IMG/VR virus record: IMGVR_UViG_3300032770_000002
Coordinates: 166,254 to 230,253 of that record
Direction: 5' to 3' (one strand)
DNA length: 64,000 nt
The first letter of the stretch is position 1; each line of letters begins with the position of its first letter. The position numbers and the translations under genes were made by a program. The notes under the pieces were generated by a model. That model saw only the letters and a program-made list of their open reading frames with translations. It was not told where the DNA came from and ran no database searches. Shown piece after piece: positions 7,338 through 60,608 of the stretch.

Positions 7338-7356
7338 AAATTTTTCCACTTTTTTG

Positions 7357-7384
7357 TTTACAAATGTCAGAAGAGCGGTATATT
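7357..7384 (+). promoter_or_regulatory. class 1 sigma70-like promoter TTTACA-N16-TATATT
   Basis: tttttgTTTACAaatgtcagaagagcggTATATT. Confidence 0.8.
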
Positions 7385-7429
7385 AGGGATGTAAGTTAAA
7401 ACTTAACACGACCAAAGAAAGATAATCAT

Positions 7430-8134
7430 ATGGCACTCAAAGACATTTCAGTCAAAACTCCCAAGGCCAAAGCCGGCAAGTCCGAAATGCCCGTCGTCGA
7501 GATCAACGCGATGACCACGGTGACCGACGCTGAAGGCGTTGCCAAACAAGTTCCGCTGATCACCGAGTTCAACAAGGCCAAACTGGCCATGAAGGACGCC
7601 GAAGCCAAGGTCAAGGAGATGGAGCCGGAAGTCAAAAAGCTTGGCGTGCTGGAGTGGATCAAAGCCAACGTTGACAAAGGCCCGGGTGAACCGCTCTCGA
7701 GCGTCAAGCTTATCGACCCCAATGGCAGCGAGCTGCGCCTGACCGGTCAAGACCGCTATCCGCTGGCCGACGCCGAGCCCGTCGACGTTCTCTTCACCGA
7801 GACCCTCCACGAGGACATCAACCAGTATGTTCAGTTCACGCTCAAGGCCGCGTTCAACAGCAAGGTGTTCCTCGACGCCGACGGCGACTTCCAGGAGGAG
7901 ATTTATGAGCAGTTCAACCAGGCGTGCGCCGCCGTGGCCAAGAAGCTTGGCGTCGCCAACCCGCTGTCCGCGACCAAGGTCCTCCAGCCGAAGCCTCAGT
8001 TCCACAAGGAACGCTGGGTCAACTTCAACGTCGTGCAGAACCGCCAGCTCTTTGACGTGCTGCCGAACGTCGTGACCATGACGCCGCTCGTGACCAACGA
8101 CAAGCCCGCAGTTAAAGCTGAGTCAGCTGCGTAA
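7430..8134 (+). CDS. hypothetical protein, probably highly expressed
   Basis: 234-aa ORF with strong C/G3 codon bias; own promoter and terminator. Confidence 0.75.
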   Translation: MALKDISVKTPKAKAGKSEMPVVEINAMTTVTDAEGVAKQVPLITEFNKAKLAMKDAEAKVKEMEPEVKKLGVLEWIKANVDKGPGEPLSSVKLIDPNGSELRLTGQDRYPLADAEPVDVLFTETLHEDINQYVQFTLKAAFNSKVFLDADGDFQEEIYEQFNQACAAVAKKLGVANPLSATKVLQPKPQFHKERWVNFNVVQNRQLFDVLPNVVTMTPLVTNDKPAVKAESAA

Positions 8135-8179
8135 CAATTTTGCTGGTGTGGTCGTGTCATCGTAAAGCATCAGCAACTA

Positions 8180-8216
8180 GGTGGCCGGGATTGTCTTCCC
8201 GGCCACCGCTCTTTTT
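8180..8216 (+). terminator. intrinsic terminator
   Basis: 11-bp stem GGTGGCCGGGA / TCCCGGCCACC, 6-nt loop, then gctcttttt. Confidence 0.8.
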
Positions 8217-8525
8217 ATGACTCGATTTGAAAAAGAAATCATGACTCGCTACAGCGATCACCCGTTGGCCATGGCTCGACAACTTTACGAGCGTGACAAT
8301 GAAATTTACGAGCGTGACCATGAAATCAAAAGGTTAAAGGCCGATCTAATCCACCTGACTGTCTGCGTGAGGCGTGCTCACGAAGCTTTGGACCGGGTGA
8401 TGAACGGACCGCCAACCGTCGAGAGGGGTAGAAAGATTGCCAAAATCACCAACTACCTCGAAGACTGCAATTCCATGTTCGGCTTCAAGAAGCCAGTGAA
8501 AAAATCAGCGAAGTCGAAGACATGA
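8217..8525 (+). CDS. hypothetical protein
   Basis: ORF from ATG 8217; ATGA overlap with the next gene. Confidence 0.6.
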   Translation: MTRFEKEIMTRYSDHPLAMARQLYERDNEIYERDHEIKRLKADLIHLTVCVRRAHEALDRVMNGPPTVERGRKIAKITNYLEDCNSMFGFKKPVKKSAKSKT

Positions 8526-9025
8526 GCGAACAACTTCAACGATCGGAACGCTTGACCCTCGACGAGATTGACGACCTTGAGAAGGGTCTCGAAGGGCTCA
8601 AGACGTGGATGGACACCCTTGGATTTGGCGTCATCGCTGAGACCCCGCGCACCATCACATTCAGTCCGCGCATGCGGTCGGCTTTGGCTCGCAGCGGAAA
8701 CCTGATCATGGACATGTCCATCATGGAGACGAGGTTCATCCAGCAGTGCGGCGCCACGACGGTCAAGGCGAAGGACCACGTCCAGGAGGAATTTTGCCTG
8801 CTTGTCACGTTGAACAACGAGCGTGAGACGATGGTCCAACTGTATGGCGTGATGAACGGCCAGGAGGTCTTCAACAACTTCAAGGGCTTCGTCCACGACG
8901 TCGTCACGAACCGGCTGGCCATGCCACAGCCGATCAAAGAAGAGCTGTCCAGGACGTTTCTGGAAGGCCTGCAGGTGCTCAAGAAAGACCCTGTGAAGCT
9001 TCTTCAATTTGGCGTTACGCCATGA
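8522..9025 (+). CDS. hypothetical protein
   Basis: 167-aa ORF with ATGA coupling at both ends. Confidence 0.65.
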   Translation: MSEQLQRSERLTLDEIDDLEKGLEGLKTWMDTLGFGVIAETPRTITFSPRMRSALARSGNLIMDMSIMETRFIQQCGATTVKAKDHVQEEFCLLVTLNNERETMVQLYGVMNGQEVFNNFKGFVHDVVTNRLAMPQPIKEELSRTFLEGLQVLKKDPVKLLQFGVTP

Positions 9026-9648: not shown

Positions 9649-9655
9649 TTAGCAT

Positions 9656-12150: not shown

Positions 12151-12663
12151 ATGCATCGTTCCATCAAGATTATCTCCGGTGGTCAGACGGGGGCCGATCG
12201 TGCTGGTTTAATTTTTGCTCGCGACAACAACATCCCGTATGGAGGCTATGTGCCTTTGCGTCGAAAGGCCGAAGACGGGGTGGTGCCGATGATCTTCACC
12301 GAGATGACTGAGTCGGCATCGTCAGATTATCGTGTCAGGACTGAGTTAAACGTGAGAGAGGCCGACTGCACGATCGTCTTTACACGCTGCCCGCTCAGTG
12401 AAGTGGCCAGCGGGTCATGGCTGACGATTGCCTTCGCAAAGAAGTATGGGAAGGAGTGGCGGCACGTTGACGTCAACAAGCCGAACATGAACGAGGTTGA
12501 CAAGTGGCTTGAGATGCTTTACGCCAGGTGGCATCACTACGGAAGCGGGCTTCAATTCACGATCAACGTCGCTGGTGGGCGCGAGTCAAAGAACCGCGGC
12601 ATTCAAGACGCGGTCCTGGCGCTGTTAAAATCATCCACATTTTTGTTTACAAATCAAGGTTAG
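12151..12663 (+). CDS. SLOG-superfamily protein (putative molybdenum-carrier / YpsA-like)
   Basis: KIISGGQTGADRAGL, YRVRTELNVREADCTIVF, INVAGGRES. Confidence 0.8.
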   Translation: MHRSIKIISGGQTGADRAGLIFARDNNIPYGGYVPLRRKAEDGVVPMIFTEMTESASSDYRVRTELNVREADCTIVFTRCPLSEVASGSWLTIAFAKKYGKEWRHVDVNKPNMNEVDKWLEMLYARWHHYGSGLQFTINVAGGRESKNRGIQDAVLALLKSSTFLFTNQG

Positions 12664-12674
12664 TGTGGTATATT
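12646..12674 (+). promoter_or_regulatory. class 1 promoter, leaderless
   Basis: TTTACA-N17-TATATT, then ATG 6 nt later (12681). Confidence 0.85.
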
Positions 12675-12680
12675 AACGGC

Positions 12681-13769
12681 ATGATACGGATTGACAACGC
12701 GCCTGTTCCAAACGTGGTCTCGGACCGCAAACTGGGCCTTGAGATCGAGATTGATCTCGGCAACAATGGGGACCTCAGCGACCTTCCAGACATTCAAGGC
12801 TGGATCAAAAAGGGTGACGGCTCGCTCACGCACGGCTACGAATACACGTTCAACGGACCGTGCACACCGTCAACATCGAAGGAACGGTGTGAACGATTCT
12901 GTCAGTCGATTAAAGATGTGAACGTTCACCGCTCTGGCGGCTTTCACGTTCATGTCCAGGGCAACAACTATTCACACGAGGACGCATACAACCTTTGCTT
13001 GATTTACACGAAATTCCAGGACGTCATCAACAAGCTTGTGGCGCCTTCTCGAGTCAGCAACACCTACTGCGAAGCCTATTCGTGGACGTCACTCCGACAT
13101 CACACTCCGGCGTCATTCGCCCAGGCCTACAATTTGACGCCGCTTGTCAGCAGTCGTGGCTCCGCGAAAAACGTGGCCAACCGCTATCGGGCAGTCAACA
13201 CGAACATGCTAGCTTGCCGTGACGAGGCCGACCGCAGCATTGAATTTCGACAGGGCAGTGTCAGCAAGCGATTTGGCGTGGTCTACGGGTGGCCTTGCTT
13301 CCTTGCGGCATTGACTGAGTTGGCCCAGTGCAAAGACCTCTTCGACGAAGTCCTTAGTGCGCGGTCCATTCAACTTCGCGACCTCTTGGCCGTGCTTCAC
13401 GCCTGGGAGTCCAAGTCCGGTTCAACGGGCGTCGCCGACTGGGTGGAGTGGCGATACAATTACCTGAATCAGAAGCCTGACGACGCTGAACTTCGCCTCG
13501 CCTTGGAAGCCATCGCTGAGAAGCCAATCGGTCTTTATGGCCTGTCTCGCAAGATCGACATCAACCTGGCCGTGACAAAGCGGATCATTGATGACCTCTT
13601 GGCCAAGGGCCTCATCTTCAAGCGGGCCAACTCGACAGCTTATGTCACGTCCTATGAGTTTAAGGCTGAGGCCGACCTGAAGCAGATGATTGAGGCTTTG
13701 AAGAGCCGAGCGGCCAGTCTTACACCGCCTCCGCCAATGCCGGCCACCCTGCCTCCGCCACAAACATGA
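12681..13769 (+). CDS. putative amidoligase (COOH-NH2 ligase) 1
   Basis: LGLEIEI, DGSL..GYE, SGGFHVHV, NTYC, RYRAVN, SIEFRQ; possible C-terminal HTH and Pro-rich tail. Confidence 0.8.
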   Translation: MIRIDNAPVPNVVSDRKLGLEIEIDLGNNGDLSDLPDIQGWIKKGDGSLTHGYEYTFNGPCTPSTSKERCERFCQSIKDVNVHRSGGFHVHVQGNNYSHEDAYNLCLIYTKFQDVINKLVAPSRVSNTYCEAYSWTSLRHHTPASFAQAYNLTPLVSSRGSAKNVANRYRAVNTNMLACRDEADRSIEFRQGSVSKRFGVVYGWPCFLAALTELAQCKDLFDEVLSARSIQLRDLLAVLHAWESKSGSTGVADWVEWRYNYLNQKPDDAELRLALEAIAEKPIGLYGLSRKIDINLAVTKRIIDDLLAKGLIFKRANSTAYVTSYEFKAEADLKQMIEALKSRAASLTPPPPMPATLPPPQT

Positions 13770-21441: not shown

Positions 21442-21451
21442 CGTATTTTTG

Positions 21452-21480
21452 TTTACAAACGTCTCTCTCCCGTGTAGATT
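21452..21480 (+). promoter_or_regulatory. class 1 promoter
   Basis: TTTACA-N17-TAGATT; in-frame GTG 7 nt later (21488). Confidence 0.7.
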
Positions 21481-21487
21481 ATGGCTC

Positions 21488-21772
21488 GTGAAGACGCTCA
21501 ATTTGCAAGTCGGTGCGATGTGCGGCATGCCAAGCCAGACGTGCCTCATGTCCAAGAAAAATCGTGAAGCTCTTCAACTTGACGTCAACGGCCTGGTCGT
21601 TGTGCGGTCCAATGACCAAGACACCTCGGTGGTTCGACGCATCCTTAAGGCTCCAAACATCCCGCAAAAGGACGCCTTCGTGTTCTTGTCACCTGACGAC
21701 CTAAACTTGCTCAATGTCAACATTGCAGACAACGTCGAGCTCAGCCAAGACACCGAGGGAGTGGAGACTTAG
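21488..21772 (+). CDS. hypothetical protein
   Basis: ORF, start reassigned to the GTG after the promoter. Confidence 0.55.
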   Translation: MKTLNLQVGAMCGMPSQTCLMSKKNREALQLDVNGLVVVRSNDQDTSVVRRILKAPNIPQKDAFVFLSPDDLNLLNVNIADNVELSQDTEGVET

Positions 21773-22545: not shown

Positions 22546-23055
22546 GTGTCAAGACAAATCGTCCACTACTTGGGCCACGGCATGTCAGCCTGCATGCGGG
22601 AAGGGCCCCCTTCGCTGTGGCCTGACAACCATAAGTGGTCAAGTGACTGGAAGGACGTTACATGTGGAGAATGTCTCCTTGGAAAAAACGAAGTCCACAC
22701 GTTCATGATTTCGCCTGATGGTCGAAGCATCACGTGTCTTCGGTGCCACATGACGAGCTTTAATCCAACGGACGTCGAGCGACACTACTGCAGCTACTGT
22801 GATGTCTTCCATGACGACCTTTGGCCTCCAGCAAGGCGGGCGTGGATGCATTCACTTCTGGCCACGGTTAACCAAGTCTATGACGAAGACACGTTTTCGG
22901 TGACGGATCGACAAGGACAATCACACTGCATTTACGTTTCCAACCATGACGTCAATGTTGGCGACATCGGCATTCTTCGATATAACGATCGTGATTGGTC
23001 TTGGAAGCGGTTGGAAAAGCGCGAAACCGGCGTCGTCCTGATCTCCAGAAAATAA
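22546..23055 (+). CDS. Cys/His-rich hypothetical protein
   Basis: VTCGEC, ITCLRC..YCSYC..FH; GTTCTG 6 nt upstream. Confidence 0.6.
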   Translation: MSRQIVHYLGHGMSACMREGPPSLWPDNHKWSSDWKDVTCGECLLGKNEVHTFMISPDGRSITCLRCHMTSFNPTDVERHYCSYCDVFHDDLWPPARRAWMHSLLATVNQVYDEDTFSVTDRQGQSHCIYVSNHDVNVGDIGILRYNDRDWSWKRLEKRETGVVLISRK

Positions 23056-23058
23056 TTG

Positions 23059-23086
23059 TTTACAAACCTCAGAAGTGTGGTATATT
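23059..23086 (+). promoter_or_regulatory. class 1 promoter, leaderless
   Basis: TTTACA-N16-TATATT; ATG at 23093. Confidence 0.85.
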
Positions 23087-23092
23087 GGTTCC

Positions 23093-23281
23093 ATGAGTGA
23101 TGCACTTCGAGACAAAAATGGACGTGCCATCGGTTACGTGACCGAGGACAGCAGCCGCAAAACGGTCCGTGACGTCAACGGCCGGCCTCAAGGCAGCTAC
23201 GACTCACGAGACAACGCAACTCGCGATAAAAATGGGCGCGTGACCGGATACGGTGACCAGACATTCGGCTTTCTTCGATAA
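23093..23281 (+). CDS. small protein with three RDxNGR repeats
   Basis: LRDKNGRAIG / VRDVNGRPQG / TRDKNGRVTG. Confidence 0.7.
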   Translation: MSDALRDKNGRAIGYVTEDSSRKTVRDVNGRPQGSYDSRDNATRDKNGRVTGYGDQTFGFLR

Positions 23282-24531: not shown

Positions 24532-24541
24532 TTAGCCCAAG

Positions 24542-26440: not shown

Positions 26441-26996
26441 ACTTAAACCAGTCCGAAGAGTCTTGTTCGGGACTTCCAAGCGGCCGATAAGGAGTGCCTT
26501 TTCGTTTCAACACAACGCCCTCGAACTCAGATCGAAGCGTGTGCTCAGTGAGCAGCTCCCCAAGCAGCCAGTCCTCTGTCACTGAAAACATCCACGGAAG
26601 TCCAAGTTGTCCACTGATCTTGACAGCCGCGGCTTGGCGCACGTCCGGTCCTTGGTCGAGGAGTGAAAAGCCGTCGACGCAGAGAGCCTCAAACGGGTAG
26701 AATTTTGACTTGTAGACCTCACCGTCGAGGACCATCAGTTTGCTGACGTGTGTGAAGTCTTTGGCGTTGAGCGCCGGGTGACGAAATTGTTCGGCTCGTC
26801 GATTGATGATTTGAACCTGTCCATTGATGACGGCCAAGACGGCACGGTCACCGTTGAGCTTTCGCTGGACGACGTCGCCGTTTTTCATGCGCGTCATCAG
26901 TTCTGTAATCTTTGACGCCGTCAATTCTTGGCCTTTGGTTGGCCGCATCGGGAACAGGGGAAAGCTCAGTCCTGGGACGATCAGAGTTCGATTCAT
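26415..26996 (-). CDS. ATP-dependent ligase / capping-type nucleotidyltransferase domain only
   Basis: KLNGDR (motif I), LDGEV (III), FEAL (IIIa), EGVVLK (IV), WFKFK (V); no OB domain. Confidence 0.75.
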   Translation of the reverse strand: MNRTLIVPGLSFPLFPMRPTKGQELTASKITELMTRMKNGDVVQRKLNGDRAVLAVINGQVQIINRRAEQFRHPALNAKDFTHVSKLMVLDGEVYKSKFYPFEALCVDGFSLLDQGPDVRQAAAVKISGQLGLPWMFSVTEDWLLGELLTEHTLRSEFEGVVLKRKGTPYRPLGSPEQDSSDWFKFKYRVIAN

Positions 26997-27002
26997 GGCT
27001 CA

Positions 27003-27030
27003 AATATAACGACCGGCCGTAATTTGTAAA
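27003..27030 (-). promoter_or_regulatory. class 1 promoter, leaderless (minus strand)
   Basis: TTTACA-N16-TATATT, then tgagcc-ATG (26996). Confidence 0.85.
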
Positions 27031-27044
27031 CAGAAAAATAATTG

Positions 27045-27073
27045 TTTACAAATTATGGAACTTGTGGTATATT
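27045..27073 (+). promoter_or_regulatory. class 1 promoter, leaderless
   Basis: TTTACA-N17-TATATT, then ccaccc-ATG (27080). Confidence 0.85.
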
Positions 27074-27079
27074 CCACCC

Positions 27080-27691
27080 ATGAACATCGCCACGATCGAT
27101 TTTCAGATGACGGTAAAGTCCAACGGGTGGTCGAGCGACAAGCTCAAATACGCCGACCTGGCCAAGGACGCTTCCATGCTTGTCGACATGCTCGACGACC
27201 TCGACGCGGACCTGGAAGTCATCACGTTCATCTTCAACGTCAGCATGACATACGATCAGGTCATGCGCATGTTCAGGCTTTTTGCCAAGGGCCGAAACCA
27301 CATGGCATACCACTTCGGCCGATCCTTGCAGGCGACGTCGGCATACGACCCTGATTACAGCCGTGACGGTCAGACGCTGGTTTTCCGGGACATCTGCAAG
27401 GTTGAAAATGCGTCGTGGGACGGGAACAAATCTGCTCCAGTCACAATCACGTTCGAGGACATCCTCAAAATTCAAAACCAACAGCTTCGCGGGTTTACGA
27501 TCGTGGCCAACCTGATTCGATTGGCCAACCTCATTGCGTGGTCCGTGGTGAATGACGTCAAGCTCTCACCAAAACCGGTGACGATGAAGACGTGGAACAC
27601 GATCACCATCTGGGGCGAGAGCCCGTGGACGAAAAAAGTCGAAGGTGTTGGAGCGGTCCCGGACGACGATGACCTTTACGCCGAGGAGTAA
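27080..27691 (+). CDS. hypothetical protein
   Basis: ORF starting 6 nt after the -10 element. Confidence 0.7.
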   Translation: MNIATIDFQMTVKSNGWSSDKLKYADLAKDASMLVDMLDDLDADLEVITFIFNVSMTYDQVMRMFRLFAKGRNHMAYHFGRSLQATSAYDPDYSRDGQTLVFRDICKVENASWDGNKSAPVTITFEDILKIQNQQLRGFTIVANLIRLANLIAWSVVNDVKLSPKPVTMKTWNTITIWGESPWTKKVEGVGAVPDDDDLYAEE

Positions 27692-31542: not shown

Positions 31543-31682
31543 GTTTTATCTATCAGTCAAAACAATCCCCGGCGGTCCATTTCGCTCACGGAGCGCGTGA
31601 TTGAGCCGCTAAAATACGCTGTTTGACGGTCTTTAAACGTCACTGTTACGCCCCAGGCGTCAAAACTTTTTACATTTTTTTG

Positions 31683-31711
31683 TTTACAAATGGCAGGAGA
31701 CGTGATATATT
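31683..31711 (+). promoter_or_regulatory. class 1 promoter, leaderless
   Basis: TTTACA-N17-TATATT, then ccctcc-ATG (31718). Confidence 0.85.
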
Positions 31712-31717
31712 CCCTCC

Positions 31718-35818: not shown

Positions 35819-35927
35819 CCTGCGGATGAAGCCGGCCCACGGCGACGACGTCATCTGCCACCTGGTCGTTTCAAACCTCGAGTCGATGATGATCATGGCC
35901 CAGGACATTGTCGATAATTCTCGTTAA
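35652..35927 (+). CDS. hypothetical protein
   Basis: MKYVMF...H...SAGEF...GQSSSL; overlaps the end of the upstream ORF. Confidence 0.55.
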   Translation: MKYVMFTHKPSGMRYPVFMAGHISHSDVKLDDKNFEATSAGEFDVETGRCVGQSSSLRMKPAHGDDVICHLVVSNLESMMIMAQDIVDNSR

Positions 35928-35933
35928 TTTTTG

Positions 35934-35961
35934 TTTACAAAATTCGGATTGTATGTATAAT
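35934..35961 (+). promoter_or_regulatory. class 1 promoter
   Basis: TTTACA-N16-TATAAT; ATGs at 35966 and 35969. Confidence 0.85.
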
Positions 35962-35965
35962 GGTT

Positions 35966-36604
35966 ATGATGACATTTGACAAAGGCAAACTTGACTTGAT
36001 GGCGATTTACCTGTGCCAGTGTCGCGTGAAGTCGCTGGCCGAATCACAGGACGTCCACGTTCCGCCGAGCGCTGGCGAGGCCATTCAGCTCATTCGATTT
36101 CTCAAGGACGCGGGTGTCAAGCCGCTGGTCATCGGGTCCGTTGGCGTCCTCAGTTACCTGAACGTTGACCCAACCAAGAATTTCAGGCCGACCGTTGACC
36201 TGGACCTCTGGGTTGAAAAAGTTCCGCGTCAGTTGCCGCGTGGTTGGACGATCGACCACGAAGCGATTGGCGTCGACAGCTGGGTGAGTCCTTCGGGTGG
36301 CACGGTTGACTTCATTGTTCCTGGACAAAAATTTCCGTCTGGCGGGCGTTCACCGAAGTCGATCAACGCCAACCCTGACTTTGTCGACACTGACTTTCCA
36401 GTCGCTGATTGGGTTGACTTGGTTAAGCTGAAGCTTAACTCGGTTCGTGAGAAAGACCTGGCTGACGTCATTGCGCTTGTGCGCGCCATGGGCCGCGTTC
36501 CAAGTCCAACTGAACTTGGTTCTTTGAATGGTGACCAGCGCGATAATCTTGACTTGGTTAAGAAGTGGTTCCAGCTTCGTCCAAGTGGTCAATACGGCGA
36601 GTGA
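35966..36604 (+). CDS. nucleotidyltransferase (AbiEii/MenT/DUF6036-like)
   Basis: VIGSVGV, RPTVDLDL, VDFI, LVKLKL..REKDLADV. Confidence 0.7.
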   Translation: MMTFDKGKLDLMAIYLCQCRVKSLAESQDVHVPPSAGEAIQLIRFLKDAGVKPLVIGSVGVLSYLNVDPTKNFRPTVDLDLWVEKVPRQLPRGWTIDHEAIGVDSWVSPSGGTVDFIVPGQKFPSGGRSPKSINANPDFVDTDFPVADWVDLVKLKLNSVREKDLADVIALVRAMGRVPSPTELGSLNGDQRDNLDLVKKWFQLRPSGQYGE

Positions 36605-37423: not shown

Positions 37424-37474
37424 GCCGTAACTAATGCGAGTTTACACACGAGCCGAAGTTCTGTATCTTGTCAT

Positions 37475-37666
37475 ATGAGTGAAGACGCTAACGGGAAGTG
37501 GTGCGTGCTCGTTGACGGGCGCCAGGTGACTGGTCCACTTGACGAGTCCTCCGCTAAGACCCAAGCAGATGAACGCCGACGAAAAATCGCCAAGTCCAAG
37601 TCAACCAACGAAGGACAAGGCGCTTCCGTCCCAATCATCGAAGCGAAACAAATCCTCTTCGGTTGA
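37475..37666 (+). CDS. hypothetical protein
   Basis: ORF from ATG 37475 ending KQILFG. Confidence 0.5.
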   Translation: MSEDANGKWCVLVDGRQVTGPLDESSAKTQADERRRKIAKSKSTNEGQGASVPIIEAKQILFG

Positions 37667-38279: not shown

Positions 38280-40388
38280 ATGGCTGACAAGCAGACCGAA
38301 AGTCCGATTATCGAGCCAGTTGGCCCGCCAATCATCCACACGGGCCACACGACCGATGTCGATCGGTCCCTTGACTTGATCTTAGATGGTGAGGACGCGA
38401 CAAGGGTTCTCGCCAATCTTGACCCAACAAGCCTCGAGTTTTTCTACGAGCTGATTGATTCGATTAGGCAGGGCAACGACAAGGAGGCCCTTGACCGGCT
38501 GTGGCGGGTTGACTACATCAAGGCTCCGCCGACCATCGAGGAGTTCATTGACGACCCGTATTGGCTGGGTGAGGTGACCTGCCACACGGACGAAAATGAA
38601 GGCATTTTTCCAATATGGCGAAAGGTGCTGCTGACTGACTTTGACCTCGACTCAAAAATCCATAACGCGGTTGTCACTGGCAGCTTGGGCGTTGGCAAAA
38701 GCTTCATCTCCGTCGTCATCTTGCTCTACCGCATTGCCTTGGCTAGGCTCCTGAGAAACCCGTATAACTTCTTCTCGATGTCGAGGGGCACGCAGCTTTT
38801 CTACACGATCATCTCCATCACGCGGGCCCAGGTTCAAGAGACTGCCTTTGGCGACGCGCTGAACTTCATGGCGAACAGCCCGTTCTTCATTGAGGAGTGC
38901 GGGTTTGACCCAAACATGATGTATCGCTCACAGGTCATTGACCTTGGCAACAACGTCATGATCAACGCGGGGTCAAAAGGCTGGCACTTCATCGGTAAAA
39001 GCGTGATGGGGATTCTCTTTGACGAAGGCAACTTTCGCATTGAATCGAACCCAAATTTAAAAGCCTACCAGATGTTCAACGAGGCGAGGAAGCGGTTTAA
39101 GTCACGCTTCCAGAAGAAGGCCACCTACCTTCCGGCCATCTCACTGCTCTCCTCATCTGCAGCTGACGAGTCATCATTCACCGAGCAAATCGTCAAGGAG
39201 ATTGCTGAGTCAGGTGACCCACACCAGAAGGTGTATCGGTTTTCAACTTACGTTGCCCGCGCGCACCTTCTTGAAGACCTCAACCAAGACCGGTGGTTCA
39301 GGGTTTCTTACGGCTTGCGCAACATTGAGCCGACGATTCTTCGTGGGTGGTTTGACGCCGATGGTAAACTGCTGCTGGCGTCTGGCACCCCTGAAGAGCA
39401 AACTCTGGAGCAACCTGCTCCAGGTTGTTCGGTTGAGTATGTGCCAGAGCGGTATTTCGACGTCTATCGACGCGACTGCCGTGGCTCACTTCAGGCGATT
39501 AGCGGCATTTCCGTTGGCGGCACGCATCGGTTGTTCCCATCGACGATTGACATCGAGATCTGCATCGACATGGCCATTAAGGACGGACTGAAAAACCCGT
39601 GCTTGACTGAGCTGATGCCGATCTCGATGGAGGACGACAAGAACGTCTGGGACTACCTGGACCACAACTCATTCTTGATGCTCCATCGCAGCCAGGTCGT
39701 GCCGCGCAGACACCCTGACATGCTGCGATTCGCCCACATCGACTTGGCCACCGAGACCATGGCCGGCGTCAGCATCTGCCACCTTCTCGGGCGGCAGTTG
39801 GTTGAGGACCAAAAGCTCGGCGAGGTCTTCAAGGAATATCGGCTCATCGTCGAGTATGACTTTGTCCTGACCATTATCGCTGGGCAGCGAAAGCCAATTT
39901 CGATTGGGAAGATCTTCAACTTCTTCTTTTGGCTGCGTGACAAGTGCGGCTTCCACTTCGGGTTAATCACCGCGGACCAGTGGCAGTCGGTCCTTCCACT
40001 CCAGACGCTCGAAGCGGCTGGTTTTAACGTCGGCAACGTCTCGTTGGACAGGACGTCGGCGCCATACCATGAGTGGCGCCGTGGATTCAGTGAACACCGC
40101 ATCCGAACTTATCGCCAAAACCAGATGATCAAGGAATGTGAAGCGCTGCTTGACTTCGGCGACCGCGTTGAAAAGCCAGAGGGCGGGTCGAAAGACACGA
40201 CTGACGGTGCCGCTGGAGCGTATTGGAATGCGGTCAGTTCAGCAAGCGAGATGGGCAAGCAGACGACGTCAGCTCCACCGTCCGTGTTTCAGGAAAATGT
40301 CTTCGCCAACGAGGAGGCAGAGAAGCCGCCCATTGAAATTCCAGTCAACATCGAACACCCGCAGGTCGATTCGATCACGATCATTTAG
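38280..40388 (+). CDS. terL: terminase large subunit
   Basis: PPTIEEFIDDPYWLG, TGSLGVGKS Walker A, LFDEGN Walker B, LLSSS, HIDLA and TADQWQS nuclease motifs, SKDTTDG. Confidence 0.85.
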   Translation: MADKQTESPIIEPVGPPIIHTGHTTDVDRSLDLILDGEDATRVLANLDPTSLEFFYELIDSIRQGNDKEALDRLWRVDYIKAPPTIEEFIDDPYWLGEVTCHTDENEGIFPIWRKVLLTDFDLDSKIHNAVVTGSLGVGKSFISVVILLYRIALARLLRNPYNFFSMSRGTQLFYTIISITRAQVQETAFGDALNFMANSPFFIEECGFDPNMMYRSQVIDLGNNVMINAGSKGWHFIGKSVMGILFDEGNFRIESNPNLKAYQMFNEARKRFKSRFQKKATYLPAISLLSSSAADESSFTEQIVKEIAESGDPHQKVYRFSTYVARAHLLEDLNQDRWFRVSYGLRNIEPTILRGWFDADGKLLLASGTPEEQTLEQPAPGCSVEYVPERYFDVYRRDCRGSLQAISGISVGGTHRLFPSTIDIEICIDMAIKDGLKNPCLTELMPISMEDDKNVWDYLDHNSFLMLHRSQVVPRRHPDMLRFAHIDLATETMAGVSICHLLGRQLVEDQKLGEVFKEYRLIVEYDFVLTIIAGQRKPISIGKIFNFFFWLRDKCGFHFGLITADQWQSVLPLQTLEAAGFNVGNVSLDRTSAPYHEWRRGFSEHRIRTYRQNQMIKECEALLDFGDRVEKPEGGSKDTTDGAAGAYWNAVSSASEMGKQTTSAPPSVFQENVFANEEAEKPPIEIPVNIEHPQVDSITII

Positions 40389-40391
40389 TTG

Positions 40392-40419
40392 TTTACAAAT
40401 TTAGGATTCGTGGTATACT
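40392..40419 (+). promoter_or_regulatory. class 1 promoter, leaderless
   Basis: TTTACA-N16-TATACT, then ggggcc-ATG (40426). Confidence 0.85.
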
Positions 40420-40425
40420 GGGGCC

Positions 40426-40608
40426 ATGAAGAAGTTTGTTGTCCTGCTCTTTATGGCCTGCTCAGGGTGCGTCACATACATCGAGCCGGGCTATCACGAC
40501 ATTGACGGGGCCGCTCGATGGACGAGCGCCGATTACAGTCAAAGTTCCTGGGTTGAATTTCAATCTGAACCAGGGACTCCAGTCAGAATTCGTCGGTCTA
40601 ACCCTTAG
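40426..40608 (+). CDS. small putative lipoprotein
   Basis: MKKFVVLLFMACSGC signal with lipobox-like SGC. Confidence 0.6.
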   Translation: MKKFVVLLFMACSGCVTYIEPGYHDIDGAARWTSADYSQSSWVEFQSEPGTPVRIRRSNP

Positions 40609-47738: not shown

Positions 47739-47748
47739 GGAAATTTTG

Positions 47749-47777
47749 TTTACAAGTTTATGGTTCTTTGGTATGGA
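47749..47777 (+). promoter_or_regulatory. degenerate class 1 promoter
   Basis: ttttgTTTACAag present; -10 is poor (TATGGA). Confidence 0.4.
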
Positions 47778-49632: not shown

Positions 49633-50085
49633 TCATTCCTTGGTCACGTTACCGCACTCCTTGCAGACATAGGTGGTGACGACGTTGTTCTCACCGATGG
49701 TTCGGTGTATTGCTTCCCTTTGGCCACCGCAGGAAACGCACCGTTCGACCTCCTCTTCAACTTCGAGATTCGTGCTTGGGCTGTGAATTTTGTCTAGCTC
49801 ACGCACCTTGTCGAGCTCACGTGTGTTGTCCTGTTTTTGGTCTTCAACAGTCAGGGCCTGATTTTCTGGGGTTGCCGGTCGAGTTGGCCTGGTCAGTGGA
49901 AGCAACGTTGACCAGCTTGTGCTTGGGATGGGCTGAGTGGTGTCCGACGTCGACTTTTTAAACAGGTCTTGCAGGGCCCTTAACGTCGACTTAAAAGCGA
50001 GAATCAAGACCACGGAAGAAACGATCTGGAGCGCCGCAAGAATCGCCAGGATAACGACCAGGATTGTGTTTGAATTTTGGTTCAC
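49633..50085 (-). CDS. membrane-anchored protein with C-terminal Zn ribbon
   Basis: N-terminal TM segment; CVSCG...CKECG. Confidence 0.6.
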   Translation of the reverse strand: MNQNSNTILVVILAILAALQIVSSVVLILAFKSTLRALQDLFKKSTSDTTQPIPSTSWSTLLPLTRPTRPATPENQALTVEDQKQDNTRELDKVRELDKIHSPSTNLEVEEEVERCVSCGGQREAIHRTIGENNVVTTYVCKECGNVTKE

Positions 50086-50092
50086 TTTTTTG

Positions 50093-50121
50093 TTTACAAA
50101 TTACGGTTGTTGTGGTATAGT
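50093..50121 (+). promoter_or_regulatory. class 1 promoter, leaderless
   Basis: TTTACA-N17-TATAGT, then gtggcc-ATG (50128). Confidence 0.85.
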
Positions 50122-50127
50122 GTGGCC

Positions 50128-50349
50128 ATGATGACCGACGACATTCTTGACGGAGCAGAACTTGCTATTGATGACGGAAGCGCCAGGGAAGACTTGGACA
50201 GGCTGGAAGCCGCCGTCTCAAAGACCATCGCTGAGGACCAGTATTTCTGGGCCATTGAGATGGGCTTCAACAACACCGAAGCCTGCGCCATCGCTGACGC
50301 TGCTGTGATCGATTACAACTCGAGCTTTATCTTAGCTCGAGCCAATTGA
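50128..50349 (+). CDS. small acidic early protein
   Basis: 73 aa; about 16 D/E against 4 K/R. Confidence 0.6.
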   Translation: MMTDDILDGAELAIDDGSAREDLDRLEAAVSKTIAEDQYFWAIEMGFNNTEACAIADAAVIDYNSSFILARAN

Positions 50350-55831: not shown

Positions 55832-55846
55832 TCGAAAGAGCTTTGA

Positions 55847-57259: not shown

Positions 57260-57474
57260 ACGTTCGACTGTGGTTTGTCAGAGACAATCCCGGCGGTTTG
57301 TCGAGGATTTATTCACGCATTCCGAGTTCACGAAATCCGGATGACTTTGACATGATTCTCATTCCACGAAGTCAAATTGAACGCTGTCAAAAGTGGCCAG
57401 TCAAGGAGGGTGAAAGGTGGCCTGAGCACCACATTACTATTCCGGACTGGCTTGCCCAAAAGAAGGGCCTGTAA
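57256..57474 (+). CDS. hypothetical protein
   Basis: IPRSQI...ITIPDWLAQKKGL motif. Confidence 0.65.
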   Translation: MNVRLWFVRDNPGGLSRIYSRIPSSRNPDDFDMILIPRSQIERCQKWPVKEGERWPEHHITIPDWLAQKKGL

Positions 57475-57491
57475 ATTTTTTCAATTTTTTG

Positions 57492-57520
57492 TTTACAACT
57501 TCGGTTCGTTGTGGTATATT
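57492..57520 (+). promoter_or_regulatory. class 1 promoter
   Basis: TTTACA-N17-TATATT; ATG at 57534. Confidence 0.85.
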
Positions 57521-57533
57521 CATCCCAGAGTTT

Positions 57534-58634
57534 ATGCCAAACGTTGATGAGAAACTGACATTCGGGATTGAGTTGGAAGGCGTGCGAGCCTCCTCTGAAT
57601 CGCAGGTCTTGGCCCAAATGTGGAACTTCACAAAGCGTTACGATCACTCCATCACTGACGACCACGGGCAACCGCTTCCTCGGACACTTGAAGAGGGCGG
57701 CGGCTTTGAATACATCACGCCTGTGCTGAGCGTCGATGTTCGCATGACCAACGCCGGTGAGCGATTGGCCATCAACTGGGGCACTTCACTGAATGCCATC
57801 CGCGACCTCTGTTTATGCGTCGCTCACGTCAACAAGTCGTGCGGCGTTCACATTCACCTCGGCCGCCCGGCAAGTGACAGCGTGACCCACTCGAAGTGGG
57901 AGCCAGAGCGAGTTCGGACCATGCTGACAGTCGGCATGCTCCTGGAGCCCAAGATTTTTGACGTCGTTCCTGAAAGCCGCCGTGGAAATCACCACTCGAA
58001 CTTCATTCGTTCACGATACTCCTCTGACGACATCTGCCAATTTTATCCGACTGGAAATGTGGTCGCCAGAAAGTTCGATAATCCCAAGCGGTATTGCTGG
58101 ATGAACCTCATTGAGACTCGGCGAGTGGGCAACGACACGCGTCCAGGGCGTGGTTCATCGACGGCTCTTGGAACGATCGAAATCCGGGCTCTTGGCAACA
58201 CAGCGTCTTACGACTACATCAGCGCTTGGACAGTCCTGTGGATGAAGATTGCAGCTTTCGTGGCCTACTTGCCATCATCGCTGGCCATGATGCGGTGCGT
58301 GTTTTCCGAAGAGCTTGCGTCGGACTTTGCGACACTGGCCAAGCTCAAGTCGACGGTCGACGAGAGCGTGGTGCTGCCGGCTGAACCGCCATCGCCGGCT
58401 CTGCCTCAGTTGACTCCTCAGCCAGCACCGCCGCGGCCACATCGACCGCTTCGTCGCCCGCTGAATGTGCTGGCCGAGCGTGAAGCTCGAAGAGAGCGCG
58501 CTCCACGTGAAGCTCGACAAGCTGGCATCCCGTCGCATGACGCAATTTTACGTGGGGCTGAACGGCTTGCTGAACCACAGACGCCTCAAATCCCGGCTGA
58601 AAATGACGGTCCGGTCGAGGAAAATCGTGACTGA
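57534..58634 (+). CDS. putative amidoligase 3
   Basis: FGIELEG, YDHSI, GFEYITP, SCGVHIHLG, RYCWMN, TIEIR; Pro-rich tail. Confidence 0.82.
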   Translation: MPNVDEKLTFGIELEGVRASSESQVLAQMWNFTKRYDHSITDDHGQPLPRTLEEGGGFEYITPVLSVDVRMTNAGERLAINWGTSLNAIRDLCLCVAHVNKSCGVHIHLGRPASDSVTHSKWEPERVRTMLTVGMLLEPKIFDVVPESRRGNHHSNFIRSRYSSDDICQFYPTGNVVARKFDNPKRYCWMNLIETRRVGNDTRPGRGSSTALGTIEIRALGNTASYDYISAWTVLWMKIAAFVAYLPSSLAMMRCVFSEELASDFATLAKLKSTVDESVVLPAEPPSPALPQLTPQPAPPRPHRPLRRPLNVLAEREARRERAPREARQAGIPSHDAILRGAERLAEPQTPQIPAENDGPVEENRD

Positions 58635-58644
58635 CGTTTAATTG

Positions 58645-58672
58645 TTTACAAATCGCAGAAACGTGATATATT
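58645..58672 (+). promoter_or_regulatory. class 1 promoter
   Basis: TTTACA-N16-TATATT; ATG at 58683. Confidence 0.85.
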
Positions 58673-58682
58673 AAGGACAAGT

Positions 58683-59645
58683 ATGTGTGCCATCATCTCC
58701 TGGAAAGGAAAACTTCCAAAAGGCCTGCTGACTCAGTTGCTTCTCAAGTCTGAGCGGCGTGGGCGTGACTCGACTGGCGTTGCATTTCGCTTGGCGTCAA
58801 GCACGGTGTCATATCGTCAGGCAGTTCCGGCCAATGAATTTGTCAGCGACCCTGAAAACAACAAGTTTTTGGGTGACGCTCGTCGGGCCATGAGCGGCAT
58901 TGCTCACACTCGTCGCGCCAGTCCTGGCATGCCAATTGACAACAGGAACGCACACCCGTTCCTTTATTGGCGGTATTTCTTTGCGCACAATGGCAAGATC
59001 CAAAACTGGAAGTCGTTGCAACAGCGCTTGATCGACCACTACTCTCAGGTGGCCAATTCCGCGACTGACGATGAGAGCAGGAAAAGCGCCGAGTGGTGTG
59101 TTCACTATTGCCGAAACATTCAGACCGATTCGAAGGTCCTTGGTCCATACATCCACACTGAGAACTTTTCACTGATCGAAGGGTGCATGGCCTTGGTGTG
59201 GCTTAAGGGCGACGAAGCCTTTACGCTGCGCATGGCCAAAGAGGCCACGGCCACGTCAGTCATTTGGCGATACATCGTTCCGCCGAAGGACGAGGAAATT
59301 GAGGACCACATGGTGACGATTGTCGGGTCAACTCACGAGATCATCGATGACTCGCTCAAGTCGCTGTCGAAGGTCATTGAGTATGACCGTGGCTCATTCA
59401 ACGACTTTCCTGAAGGGATCATTTACAAGATCGAGGCCAATGGCCTGAAGGAGCACAAGCGCCTTGACCAAAAGCCCGTCGCAATGGAGGACCAGTTTAC
59501 GTCCGAGGAAGTCAAGGACGAGACGCCCATTCAAGAGAATATCGGGTCGACTCCAGCTACTGGAGAACCTGGCGAGCCGCCGTCACCCAACTTTGAGTCG
59601 GCCCCGGCGCCTGAGTCAGCGACCACGACCACGAATCCTGTCTAA
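58683..59645 (+). CDS. class II (Ntn) glutamine amidotransferase
   Basis: N-terminal MC, RGRDSTG, HTRRAS, NAHPF, AHNGKI, TDS. Confidence 0.88.
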   Translation: MCAIISWKGKLPKGLLTQLLLKSERRGRDSTGVAFRLASSTVSYRQAVPANEFVSDPENNKFLGDARRAMSGIAHTRRASPGMPIDNRNAHPFLYWRYFFAHNGKIQNWKSLQQRLIDHYSQVANSATDDESRKSAEWCVHYCRNIQTDSKVLGPYIHTENFSLIEGCMALVWLKGDEAFTLRMAKEATATSVIWRYIVPPKDEEIEDHMVTIVGSTHEIIDDSLKSLSKVIEYDRGSFNDFPEGIIYKIEANGLKEHKRLDQKPVAMEDQFTSEEVKDETPIQENIGSTPATGEPGEPPSPNFESAPAPESATTTTNPV

Positions 59646-59647
59646 CC

Positions 59648-60184
59648 GTGTCAATCTGCCTTTCATGTTACAAGCCCATTGAGCAGGAGAAGGTCGCCGT
59701 TCTCCCTGACGCTCGATACTGCATGAAGTGCGCTCACGCGATGATGGTCGCACCCTCAAAGAGGAAGAAGAGCAATAACGGCAATGGCCACATCTCCATG
59801 GTGCCGACCCAAATGCCGACTCAGCTGCTTCTTCCTGATTCTTCGACGGTCTTGACGACGGACGCCCCAAAGGTCGTCTACGTCAAGCGTCCGTCCGTTT
59901 TGAAGGAGGAGGTTTTTGACGATGGCAAGTGCTCAACGTCGATGATGAAACGTCATCGCAAGCGAAAATCATCGCCGAGTGCTTGGCGTTATTCAAATGG
60001 CGGTGAGGCTAAAGTCGGTGACATCGTTGGACAAAGTGACGACTGTCCATCATGGGTCGTTGTTGAAGTTGACGCCAACGTGATCCACTGCCGGCGAGCT
60101 GGAGAAAGCAAGGGAACGGCCTCATTCTACATTCGCATGATGGAGCTGTTCTTCAGAGAATCGGAACTCTCAGTCGATGAATGA
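59648..60184 (+). CDS. protein with N-terminal DksA/TraR-type C4 zinc finger
   Basis: CLSCYKPIEQEKVAVLPDARYCMKC. Confidence 0.6.
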   Translation: MSICLSCYKPIEQEKVAVLPDARYCMKCAHAMMVAPSKRKKSNNGNGHISMVPTQMPTQLLLPDSSTVLTTDAPKVVYVKRPSVLKEEVFDDGKCSTSMMKRHRKRKSSPSAWRYSNGGEAKVGDIVGQSDDCPSWVVVEVDANVIHCRRAGESKGTASFYIRMMELFFRESELSVDE

Positions 60185-60548
60185 ACCACAATACATCCTG
60201 CCGGAATATCGCGAGCTCTTTAAGCGGCTGCGACCGGAAGACCTTCAATTCCCTGAGTGGCTTCAACGCAAGCTGCAGTCAAGTTTTTGCTACAGCCAGT
60301 GGGGCCCGCACTTGAGGGCTGCCGTCGTGGCCTGCCTTCAGGAGTCGGTTGTCCGGACGGACGATGACTTCGTCATTGAACTGGCCCTTCGATTCGAGAA
60401 TGAAGCCAACGCACGCCGCGACCTGGTGCGGGTCTTGGCCAAGATCGCCGAGAAGAAGGCCATCCCGTTTGACGAGTTCGTCAACGTCCAGTTTGACCAC
60501 ACTTCGCCCATGGCCAATTTGACGCCGCACCCGCTTGACGATATTTAA
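60177..60548 (+). CDS. hypothetical protein
   Basis: 123-aa ORF. Confidence 0.55.
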   Translation: MNEPQYILPEYRELFKRLRPEDLQFPEWLQRKLQSSFCYSQWGPHLRAAVVACLQESVVRTDDDFVIELALRFENEANARRDLVRVLAKIAEKKAIPFDEFVNVQFDHTSPMANLTPHPLDDI

Positions 60549-60573
60549 GCGTCTGGCAAGCTGAAAATTTTTG

Positions 60574-60602
60574 TTTACAAACCACGGTAAGCGTGGTATA
60601 TT
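60574..60602 (+). promoter_or_regulatory. class 1 promoter, leaderless
   Basis: TTTACA-N17-TATATT, then acctac-ATG (60609). Confidence 0.85.
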
Positions 60603-60608
60603 ACCTAC

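What the first reader, a model, noticed from the sequence alone, without database searches (positions are those of the whole stretch)
7351..60608. About 14 near-identical sigma70-like promoters, most placing the start codon at +1 (leaderless early regulon)
Seen: (T)TTGTTTACAA-N-(TG/GG)TATATT-like elements at 7357, 12646, 21452, 23059, 27030(-), 27045, 31683, 35934, 40392, 47749 (weak), 50093, 57492, 58645 and 60574, with 16-17 nt spacers. In about ten the start codon follows the -10 box by 6-7 nt, leaving no room for a Shine-Dalgarno site. The invariant TGTTTACAA extends beyond the -35 hexamer and could also be an operator. It corrects several ORF-track starts (12681, 21488, 23093, 27080, 35966, 50128, 57534). 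Inference: an early regulon (amidoligases, GATase, ligases, SNF2, NTase, small proteins) in a host that translates leaderless mRNA well.
Basis: seen in the sequence. Interest (0 to 1): 0.72.

Follow-up and report, generated by a model that had tools for sequence, protein, structure and literature searches.

The report
Leaderless early promoters of a jumbo phage
A 230-kb phage from a wetland metagenome carries about 27 copies of one very strong bacterial-type promoter, and most sit so close to the gene that the messenger RNA would begin at the start codon itself; this is a clear new example of a known arrangement, not a new kind of system.

Summary
TGTTTACAA occurs 14 times in the window (0.28 expected) and 33 times in the complete 230,253-bp phage genome. 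It is the genome's most frequent 9-mer.

In 27 copies, TTTACA is followed after 16-17 nt by TAnnnT, mostly TATATT. TGn precedes that box in 19 of the 27, and an A/T tract lies upstream.

In 16 of the 27, an ATG that opens a real ORF lies 6-7 nt after the -10 box (null 1.7%, p about 6e-22). Position -1 is a pyrimidine in 15 of those 16. Six more start 9-13 nt after the box.

Three closer relatives keep the motif, the -10 box and the start geometry at the three orthologous genes, while the spacers diverge.

The phage shows no Shine-Dalgarno signal and no detectable sigma factor, RNA polymerase, AsiA or MotA.

Best reading: strong host sigma-70-type promoters of the T4-early style, driving non-structural operons as leaderless or nearly leaderless mRNAs. 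Start sites, timing and host are unmeasured.

An open extra: the invariant 9-mer may also be an operator. It occurs as a conserved triple repeat before a ribbon-helix-helix gene, and in one distant relative it is enriched inside genes.

The parts
7347..7384 (+). Promoter copy 1: A/T tract, 9-mer 7355-7363, spacer 16, -10 TATATT 7379-7384. It is leadered: the first gene starts at 7430, about 40 nt downstream of the predicted +1.
12636..12683 (+). Promoter copy 2: 9-mer 12644-12652, spacer 17, TGG + TATATT 12669-12674. ATG 12681 is the predicted +1 (362-aa ORF).
21442..21490 (+). Promoter copy 3: 9-mer 21450-21458, spacer 17, -10 TAGATT 21475-21480. GTG 21488 lies 7 nt after the box (94-aa ORF); thymidylate-synthase-like gene 21714-22544 follows.
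23049..23095 (+). Promoter copy 4: 9-mer 23057-23065, spacer 16, TGG + TATATT. ATG 23093 is the predicted +1 (62 aa); amidoligase gene 23281-24531 follows.
26994..27040 (-). Promoter copy 5, back to back with copy 6: 9-mer 27032-27024, spacer 16, -10 TATATT 27008-27003. ATG 26996 is the predicted +1 of an ATP-dependent ligase-like gene (193 aa). An in-frame stop lies 3 nt upstream.
27035..27082 (+). Promoter copy 6: 9-mer 27043-27051, spacer 17, TGG + TATATT. ATG 27080 is the predicted +1 (203 aa).
31673..31720 (+). Promoter copy 7: 9-mer 31681-31689, spacer 17, TGA + TATATT. ATG 31718 is the predicted +1 of the SNF2 helicase (666 aa). An in-frame stop lies 12 nt upstream and there is no other possible start.
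35924..35971 (+). Promoter copy 8: 9-mer 35932-35940, spacer 16, -10 TATAAT 35956-35961. In-frame ATGs at 35966 and 35969 lie 4 and 7 nt after the box.
40382..40428 (+). Promoter copy 9: 9-mer 40390-40398, spacer 16, TGG + TATACT. ATG 40426 is the predicted +1 (60 aa, first gene of an eight-gene unit).
47739..47777 (+). Copy 10, weak: exact 9-mer 47747-47755, but the -10 is TATGGA without the final T, and the next gene starts at 47841. It may be a weak promoter or a binding site only.
50083..50130 (+). Promoter copy 11: 9-mer 50091-50099, spacer 17, TGG + TATAGT. ATG 50128 is the predicted +1 (73 aa).
57482..57536 (+). Promoter copy 12: 9-mer 57490-57498, spacer 17, TGG + TATATT. ATG 57534 lies 13 nt after the box (leader about 6-7 nt). 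The gene is amidoligase-like (366 aa). The promoter and the MPNV start are conserved in L097 and L099.
58635..58685 (+). Promoter copy 13: 9-mer 58643-58651, spacer 16, TGA + TATATT. ATG 58683 lies 10 nt after the box (leader about 3-4 nt). The gene is a class-II glutamine amidotransferase whose Met-Cys start is conserved in L099.
60564..60611 (+). Promoter copy 14: 9-mer 60572-60580, spacer 17, TGG + TATATT. ATG 60609 is the predicted +1 of the NAD-dependent DNA ligase (706 aa). No upstream start is possible, and Pfam domain Ia begins at residue 7. The promoter is conserved in L101, L097 and L099.
37439..37477 (+). Possible extra weak copy: AGTTTACAC (2 mismatches), spacer 17, TG + TATCTT 37464-37469. 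An ATG lies 5 nt after the box and opens a 63-aa ORF.

Best explanation
The repeated element is one family of very strong promoters read by the host's housekeeping (sigma-70-type) RNA polymerase.

Anatomy. It has an A/T-rich UP-like tract, then a -35 hexamer TTTACA embedded in the invariant TTGTTTACAAA. A 16-17 nt spacer follows, then an extended -10 (TGn + TATAtT). The initiating purine is most often the A of the start codon.

Proposed function. After infection the host polymerase would fire these roughly 27 promoters (14 in the window). They would transcribe operons for replication, nucleotide metabolism, probable DNA modification and many small proteins. About two thirds of the first genes would be made from mRNAs with no 5' leader, or one of only a few nucleotides, and translated without a Shine-Dalgarno site.

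Shown: the motif, its geometry, its excess over chance, its conservation at orthologous positions, the start-codon positions, and the lack of SD signal.

Inferred: the actual start sites, early timing, recognition by host sigma, and the host's ability to translate leaderless mRNA.
For: - Copy number: 14 exact copies in the window against 0.28 expected. There are 33 in the complete genome, where it is the top 9-mer.
- Geometry: 27 of 33 have TAnnnT at 16/17 nt, and 19 of 27 have TGn. The profile shows the A/T tract, an invariant 10-mer and the -10 box.
- Independent scan: a generic sigma-70 scan ranks these sites first.
- Start codons: an ATG opening an ORF of at least 45 aa lies 6-7 nt after the -10 in 16 of 27 (null 1.7%, p = 6e-22). 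Six more lie at 9-13 nt.
- Start-site rule: position -1 is a pyrimidine in 15 of those 16. This fits the known pyrimidine(-1)/purine(+1) preference, which I cite from memory.
- No alternative starts: several of these genes have an in-frame stop just upstream and no other possible start. In the window these are 26996(-), 31718, 40426 and 60609.
- N-termini: the LigA Pfam Ia domain starts at residue 7. LigA, amidoligase and GATase N-termini are conserved in relatives.
- Conservation: at three orthologous genes in L097, L099 and L101 (LigA 61-72% identical), TTGTTTACA, the -10 box and the spacing are kept while the spacers diverge (alignment A3).
- Relatives: more distant phages also place -35/-10 boxes 6-10 nt before start codons.
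- Translation signal: there is no SD signal upstream of genes in this genome or in G001.
- Phage factors: no sigma-70, T7-type polymerase, AsiA or MotA domain is found in the complete genome.
- Gene content: downstream genes are non-structural, namely SNF2 helicase, two ligases, amidoligases, GATases, thymidylate-synthase-like, and PolA nearby. The capsid, sheath and portal genes have no such promoter directly upstream.
- Literature: a TANNNT box about 12 nt before the start codon is the accepted in-silico mark of leaderless genes (PMC3160421).
Against: - No transcription start site or expression timing is available. No RNA run holds this phage, and relatives' RNA gave only 35-nt scraps.
- The 10-mer is invariant, more so than the -10 box and beyond what a -35 hexamer needs. 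One- or two-mismatch variants look like chance.
- In the distant relative G001 the same 9-mer is enriched about 20-fold without a -10 box downstream, and 13-14 of its 21 copies lie inside genes.
- Six of the 33 copies in this genome lack a proper -10 box.
- The same genes may also be reached by read-through from upstream units; terminator-like sites are not enriched.
- Because no gene here has an SD site, the lack of room for one is not in itself diagnostic.
Confidence: 0.7

Rival explanations
1. Dual function. The promoters are as described, but the invariant TTGTTTACAA (an imperfect palindrome, TTGT-nn-ACAA) is also the binding site of a phage-encoded regulator that switches the whole regulon. 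The best candidate is the 80-aa ribbon-helix-helix-like protein P0121 (L004:1092-1334, minus strand, outside the window). It could act as a repressor sitting on the -35 to shut early transcription off.
For: - The 10-mer is fully invariant while the -10 box varies.
- Three tandem GTTTACAA copies, 13-14 nt apart, lie directly upstream of P0121. The third copy is in -35 position of a weak promoter. The triple is conserved in relative L105 (78% identical protein) while the linkers differ.
- Double copies with the same 13-14 nt spacing occur at genome positions 89583/89596 and 154037/154051.
- The P0121 model (pLDDT 80 with an alignment) matches mainly ribbon-helix-helix repressors: DinJ, NikR, RelB, ParG, omega, Arc and AmrZ.
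- The 9-mer is enriched in G001 (21 against 1 control) and G003 (10 against 1), and both encode a P0121 homologue. G002 is 82% complete; it has no enrichment and no homologue was found.
- In G001 most copies are intragenic, so there the 9-mer is not only a promoter part.
Against: - Fold-match Z scores are low (4.5 or less), and there is no Pfam or PDB sequence hit.
- The triple repeat is absent upstream of the homologues in L224, G001 and G003.
- The co-occurrence rests on five related, partly incomplete genomes and is confounded by kinship.
- No binding test was possible; the complex job was not folded.
- T4 early promoters also show extra conserved positions without a dedicated binding protein (PMC2988021).
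Confidence: 0.25
2. Activator-dependent 'middle' promoters of the T4 MotA/AsiA type. A phage protein would bind the 9-mer in place of sigma region 4, so the promoters would fire only after early proteins are made.
For: The upstream box is invariant and paired with a good -10 and frequent TGn, as in T4 middle promoters (PMC2988021).
Against: - The box is not where a MotA box sits, which is 12 +/- 1 bp from the -10. TTTACA lies at the canonical 16-17 bp and matches 5 of 6 positions of TTGACA.
- No AsiA or MotA domain is found in the complete genome.
- If these were not early promoters, the genome would have no evident host-type promoters to start infection, and no polymerase of its own was detected.
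Confidence: 0.07
3. The TATATT box 6-7 nt before the ATG is an A/U-rich ribosome-loading element in a longer 5' leader. Transcription would start further upstream, so the mRNAs would not be leaderless.
For: The host evidently does not use SD sites. Hosts that do not rely on SD sites often use A/U-rich leaders (PMC5397173). Read-through from upstream units is possible.
Against: - The box is tied to TTTACA at 16-17 nt and to TGn at the exact extended -10 position.
- A pyrimidine at -1 and an A at +1 fit a start site.
- Genes inside the operons do not carry the box.
- No second promoter-like element is conserved upstream of the 9-mer.
Confidence: 0.05

Closest known systems
Bacteriophage T4 early promoters ('uber' UP/-35/TGn/-10 promoters read by unmodified host sigma-70 polymerase; PMC2988021)
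   Same: All four recognition elements are present together. Further positions are conserved beyond the hexamers. Many copies are spread over a large myovirus genome, upstream of pre-replicative genes, and the phage has no polymerase of its own. From memory, the T4 early -35 consensus is also GTTTAC-like rather than TTGACA. The figure with that consensus is not held, so this point is not checked.
   Different: T4 early mRNAs have leaders and SD sites. Here the start codon sits at or within a few nucleotides of +1, and no SD signal exists. The upstream 10-mer here is invariant. The phage is only distantly related: capsid 25-30% identical to known phages.
Leaderless genes marked by a -10 box next to the ORF, in Deinococcus-Thermus and Actinobacteria and in Thermus phages (PMC3160421, PMC12340547; phiYS40 and P23-45 from memory)
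   Same: A TANNNT box begins about 12 nt before the ATG, the start codon is AUG, there is no SD site, and the first genes of operons are affected.
   Different: In those hosts leadered genes keep strong SD sites; this phage has none at all. From memory, the leaderless Thermus-phage promoters are middle/late ones that lack a -35. Here there is a full -35/UP architecture on probable early genes. The host here is unknown and mesophilic (wetland).
Phage lambda cI mRNA from PRM
   Same: A leaderless phage mRNA made from a sigma-70 promoter, with the AUG at the 5' end (from memory).
   Different: That is a single regulated transcript, not a genome-wide set of about 20 uniform promoters.
T4 middle promoters (MotA box plus -10; sigma appropriation; PMC2988021)
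   Same: A conserved upstream box plus a good -10 and frequent TGn.
   Different: The box position differs (16-17 bp against 12 +/- 1 bp from the -10), and no AsiA or MotA homologue was found.
Ribbon-helix-helix repressors acting on repeated short sites (omega, Arc/Mnt, CopG)
   Same: A small ribbon-helix-helix-like protein is encoded behind an array of short repeats, and the same short site overlaps many promoters.
   Different: Binding is untested, the repeat array is conserved only in the nearest relative, and the fold match is weak.

Membership tests
Sigma-70 (housekeeping) -35/-10 promoter | -35 hexamer close to TTGACA | tested here: met
   TTTACA (5 of 6) in all 33 copies.
Sigma-70 (housekeeping) -35/-10 promoter | Spacer of 17 +/- 1 nt to a TAnnnT -10 hexamer | tested here: met
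   27 of 33 copies: 15 with 17 nt and 12 with 16 nt. In the window, 13 of 14.
Sigma-70 (housekeeping) -35/-10 promoter | Lies upstream of, and points toward, a gene | tested here: met
   All 27 point to a downstream ORF. Three are conserved at orthologous genes in relatives.
Sigma-70 (housekeeping) -35/-10 promoter | Bound and used by host holoenzyme, with a mapped start site | not testable with these tools
   The host is unknown and no RNA data exist for this phage.
T4-early-type 'uber' promoter | UP-like A/T tract, -35, TGn and -10 all present in one promoter | tested here: met
   The A/T tract at positions -8 to -1 of the 9-mer carries 0.5-1.9 bits per position. TGn is present in 19 of 27.
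Leaderless mRNA | Transcription start coincides with the start codon (leader of 0 to about 5 nt) | tested here: inconclusive
   The geometry fits: the ATG lies 6-7 nt after the -10 in 16 of 27 (p = 6e-22), with a pyrimidine at -1. No 5' ends are measured.
Leaderless mRNA | The codon at +1 is the true translation start | tested here: met
   Several genes have upstream in-frame stops and no other start. The LigA domain starts at residue 7. N-termini are conserved in relatives. This was checked for some genes only.
Leaderless mRNA | No Shine-Dalgarno site | tested here: met
   There is no room for one, and no SD signal anywhere in the genome.
T4 middle (MotA-dependent) promoter | Activator box centred at -30, 12 +/- 1 bp from the -10 | tested here: not met
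   The conserved box ends 15-16 bp from the -10, and TTTACA sits at the -35 position.
T4 middle (MotA-dependent) promoter | AsiA and MotA homologues encoded by the phage | tested here: not met
   No match to PF09010 or PF09158 in the complete genome. Very distant analogues cannot be excluded.
Ribbon-helix-helix repressor with its operator | Protein with the ribbon-helix-helix fold | tested here: inconclusive
   The top structural matches are almost all ribbon-helix-helix proteins, but Z is 4.5 or less. There is no sequence-family hit.
Ribbon-helix-helix repressor with its operator | Repeated sites at its own promoter, and binding to them | tested here: inconclusive
   The triple repeat is present here and in L105 but absent in L224, G001 and G003. 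Binding is not testable.

The most novel reading that the evidence does not exclude
The invariant TTGTTTACAA is a clade-wide DNA signal read by a small phage ribbon-helix-helix protein. In this phage it has been built into the -35 of every strong early promoter. One protein could then switch off, or time, a whole regulon of leaderless operons. In relatives such as G001 the same site is scattered inside genes and would serve another purpose.
Probability: 0.2. Interest if true: 0.6.

Novelty: new member of a known kind. Interest (0 to 1): 0.45.

Why it matters
It gives a ready-made, testable transcription map for an uncultured jumbo phage lineage from wetland and soil samples. The map covers about 27 promoter sites, corrected start codons, and operon boundaries.

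The complete lack of SD signal, together with start codons at +1, constrains the unknown host. The host must use canonical -35/-10 promoters but translate without SD sites. This also means that standard gene callers will misplace many starts in these phages.

The promoter is compact and very uniform, so it could serve as a strong expression element once the host is known.

If the 9-mer also proves to be an operator, it would be a simple example of one site controlling a whole early regulon.

Tried and rejected
- RNA evidence. No public RNA run holds this phage. Laying four metatranscriptomes that hold relatives' RNA on 57401-63000 gave only 35-nt scraps at under 90% identity. This is no evidence either way.
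- Complex prediction of four P0121 copies with the double-site DNA. The job was counted but not folded, and gave no verdict.
- Collection scan for the composite pattern in viral contigs.
- Close relatives of the early genes in IMG/VR, using LigA and SNF2 as queries. Nothing useful was found. Relatives came instead from the protein collection.
- Host assignment. A related contig is labelled as a Planctomycetota MAG. Another contig of 3.8 kb sits in a Flavobacteriales bin. The two labels conflict and both are weak. There are no tRNA genes. I did not assign a host.
- Bacteroidetes-type promoter (TTTG / TAnnTTTG, from memory). Rejected: neither the spacing nor the last three positions fit.
- Dyad symmetry in the spacer (CCAC...GTGG). 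It is seen in some copies only, and the profile shows just a conserved CGG and one G near -22. I did not pursue it.
- P0121 by sequence. No Pfam or PDB hit. Foldseek found nothing. The single-sequence model was poor.
- Mobile or repeat element. Rejected, because only about 45 nt are shared and the spacers differ.

Full report
What the window is. The window is the last 64 kb (166254-230253) of a complete virus record of 230,253 bp with direct terminal repeats and 54% G+C. The record was assembled from a wetland metagenome. It is a myovirus-like jumbo phage, with a major capsid protein at L001:17422-18873, a tail sheath at L003:57-2720 and a T4-like portal at L004:1398-3329. Its capsid is only 25-30% identical to that of any isolated phage. 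IMG/VR holds uncultured relatives with capsid identity of 58-87%.

The observation. In the whole genome there are 33 copies, and it is the most frequent 9-mer. Copies with one or two mismatches are no more frequent than chance, and almost none has a -10 box. In 27 of the 33 copies TTTACA is followed after 16 nt (12 copies) or 17 nt (15 copies) by TAnnnT. That box is mostly TATATT and is preceded by TGn in 19 cases. The profile reads: an A/T tract (cAAAtTTTT), the invariant TGTTTACAAA, a weakly conserved CGG, gTGG, TATAtT, four free positions, cC, then ATG. A generic sigma-70 scan of 20-40 kb places these sites at the top of its list: 23 sites against 9.1 in shuffles.

Start codons. I measured the distance from the last T of the -10 box to the first ATG that opens an ORF of at least 45 codons. 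It is 6 nt in 12 promoters and 7 nt in 4. The chance of that at a random position is 1.7%, giving p = 6e-22. A 6-nt gap puts the A of the ATG at the usual +1. Two more promoters fit: a GTG at 7 nt (21488), and the second of two ATGs at 35966/35969. Six have the ATG at 9-13 nt, which implies leaders of about 2-6 nt. The base before the ATG is C in 13 and T in 2 of the 16, which matches the pyrimidine(-1)/purine(+1) preference of bacterial start sites (known from memory).

Are these the true starts? For several genes an in-frame stop lies a few codons upstream and no other start exists. In the window these are 26996(-), 31718, 40426 and 60609. In the NAD-dependent ligase, Pfam domain Ia begins at residue 7. 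The class-II glutamine amidotransferase at 58683 begins Met-Cys. This fits the N-terminal catalytic cysteine that class-II amidotransferases use (from memory), and the same start is kept in a relative.

Comparative evidence. The protein collection holds closer relatives of the ligase, at 58-72% identity. Their contigs L097, L099 and L101 are syntenic with window 51-64 kb. At all three orthologous positions (amidoligase-like, amidotransferase, ligase) these phages keep TTGTTTACA, a -10 box at 16-17 nt and the distance to the start codon. The spacer and flanks have diverged. In alignment A3, TTGTTTACA is invariant in 10 of 10 sequences. Even the 12-13 nt gap before the amidoligase start (MPNV) is kept. 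More distant relatives use other boxes but the same layout. G001 has eight copies of TTGAC, 15 nt, GTTTACAttt, with an ATG 6-10 nt after TACATT. One of these precedes its SNF2 helicase. L103 has TTGACA-17-TAACCT-9-ATG. Promoter-adjacent start codons are therefore a habit of this phage group.

Translation and transcription machinery. Upstream of 145 well-scored genes there is no purine-rich signal. SD-like 4-mers are no more common than in random sequence, and the same holds in G001. The complete genome has no hit to sigma-70 regions 2 or 4, T7-type polymerase, AsiA or MotA. Transcription at the start of infection therefore most likely relies on unmodified host polymerase. That is the situation for which T4 uses its 'uber' UP/-35/TGn/-10 early promoters (PMC2988021). 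Low-SD phyla named in the literature include Planctomycetes, Bacteroidetes, Chlorobi and Cyanobacteria (PMC5397173). One related phage contig is labelled as a Planctomycetota MAG, and a 3.8-kb one sits in a Flavobacteriales bin. That is too weak and too contradictory to name a host.

What the promoters drive. In the window the units contain many small proteins of unknown function, plus:
- an SNF2 helicase
- an ATP-dependent ligase-like protein and the NAD-dependent ligase
- two amidoligase-like proteins and a class-II amidotransferase
- a thymidylate-synthase-like enzyme
- a DksA/TraR zinc-finger protein
. Outside the window the same promoter precedes further amidoligase, amidotransferase and ATPase genes. 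The capsid, sheath and portal genes have no copy pointing into them. This fits an early or pre-replicative regulon, but timing is not measured.

Is the 9-mer more than a -35? Four things suggest so.
- The 10-mer is invariant while the -10 box varies.
- Six copies lack a proper -10 box. Three of them form a tandem array, 13-14 nt apart, directly upstream of an 80-aa gene next to the portal gene (P0121). The array is conserved in the nearest relative, L105.
- With an alignment of 35 homologues, P0121 gives a model of pLDDT 80. Its best structural matches are almost all ribbon-helix-helix repressors, at low Z as expected for a 45-residue domain.
- In G001 the 9-mer is enriched (21 copies against 1 control) without a -10 box, and mostly inside genes. 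Both genomes with such enrichment encode a P0121 homologue.

Against this, the array is absent before the homologues in L224, G001 and G003, and binding could not be tested. I keep this as a secondary, non-exclusive reading at about 0.25.

Verdict. The best-supported explanation is a family of strong host-type promoters, most of which would give leaderless or nearly leaderless mRNAs for non-structural genes. This is a new member of known kinds: T4-style early promoters, and leaderless genes with the -10 box next to the ORF. It occurs in an uncultured lineage with an unknown host that does not rely on SD sites. Measured 5' ends are the missing piece.

Noticed in passing
Whole genome; in the window 24527-24533 (+), before the gene at 24542, and 3691-3685 (-), before the gene ending at 3679: A second short motif, CGTAGTT. 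Nine of its 25 genomic copies lie within 40 nt upstream of called starts (0.64 expected). Six of those begin 12-19 nt before the start codon, so that TAGTTa sits 4-11 nt before the ATG or GTG. No -35 is evident. It may be a second, factor-dependent promoter class that also gives leaderless or short-leader mRNAs.
   Followed up: partly
L004:1092-1401 (genome 61092-61401), outside the window: Three tandem GTTTACAA copies, 13-14 nt apart, lie between the portal gene and a divergent 80-aa ribbon-helix-helix-like gene (P0121). The array is conserved in relative L105.
   Followed up: partly
Related record G001 (L078-L089): G001 has 21 exact TGTTTACAA copies (control 1), mostly inside genes and without a -10 box. 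It also has eight promoters in which GTTTACAttt occupies the -10 position behind TTGAC. The shared heptamer in two different promoter positions is unexplained.
   Followed up: partly
window 59648-60184 (+): A 178-aa protein with a DksA/TraR C4 zinc finger (Pfam E = 6e-6) sits in the amidotransferase operon. It could act on host RNA polymerase. A similar gene is present in relative L099.
   Followed up: no
window 21714-22544, 23281-24531, 57534-58634 and 58683-59645; also L002:6189-7217 and L002:16372-17550: There are a thymidylate-synthase-like gene, several amidoligase-like genes and several class-II amidotransferases. The set resembles phage pathways for hypermodified DNA bases (from memory). 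The T-rich promoters might then be read on modified DNA.
   Followed up: no
window about 63870-64000, and genome 1-130: The same sequence stands at both ends of the record (for example around genome positions 61 and 230187). This is the direct terminal repeat, so the window's last bases duplicate the genome's first.
   Followed up: partly
window 7385-7394: Directly after the -10 box of the first promoter stands ATG-TAA, a start codon followed at once by a stop. The real gene begins about 40 nt later, at 7430.
   Followed up: no
All 33 copies of the motif: GTTTAC fits GTWWAC, the target of an orphan adenine methyltransferase described in Burkholderia and Ralstonia (PMC11380664, PMC11460718). 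Whether host or phage methylation touches these promoters is unknown.
   Followed up: no
L001:18874-18944 (genome 18874-18944): A G+C-rich hairpin with a T run (terminator-like) after the capsid gene runs straight into the A/T tract of a promoter copy. In relative L010 the hairpin is kept but the promoter is not.
   Followed up: partly
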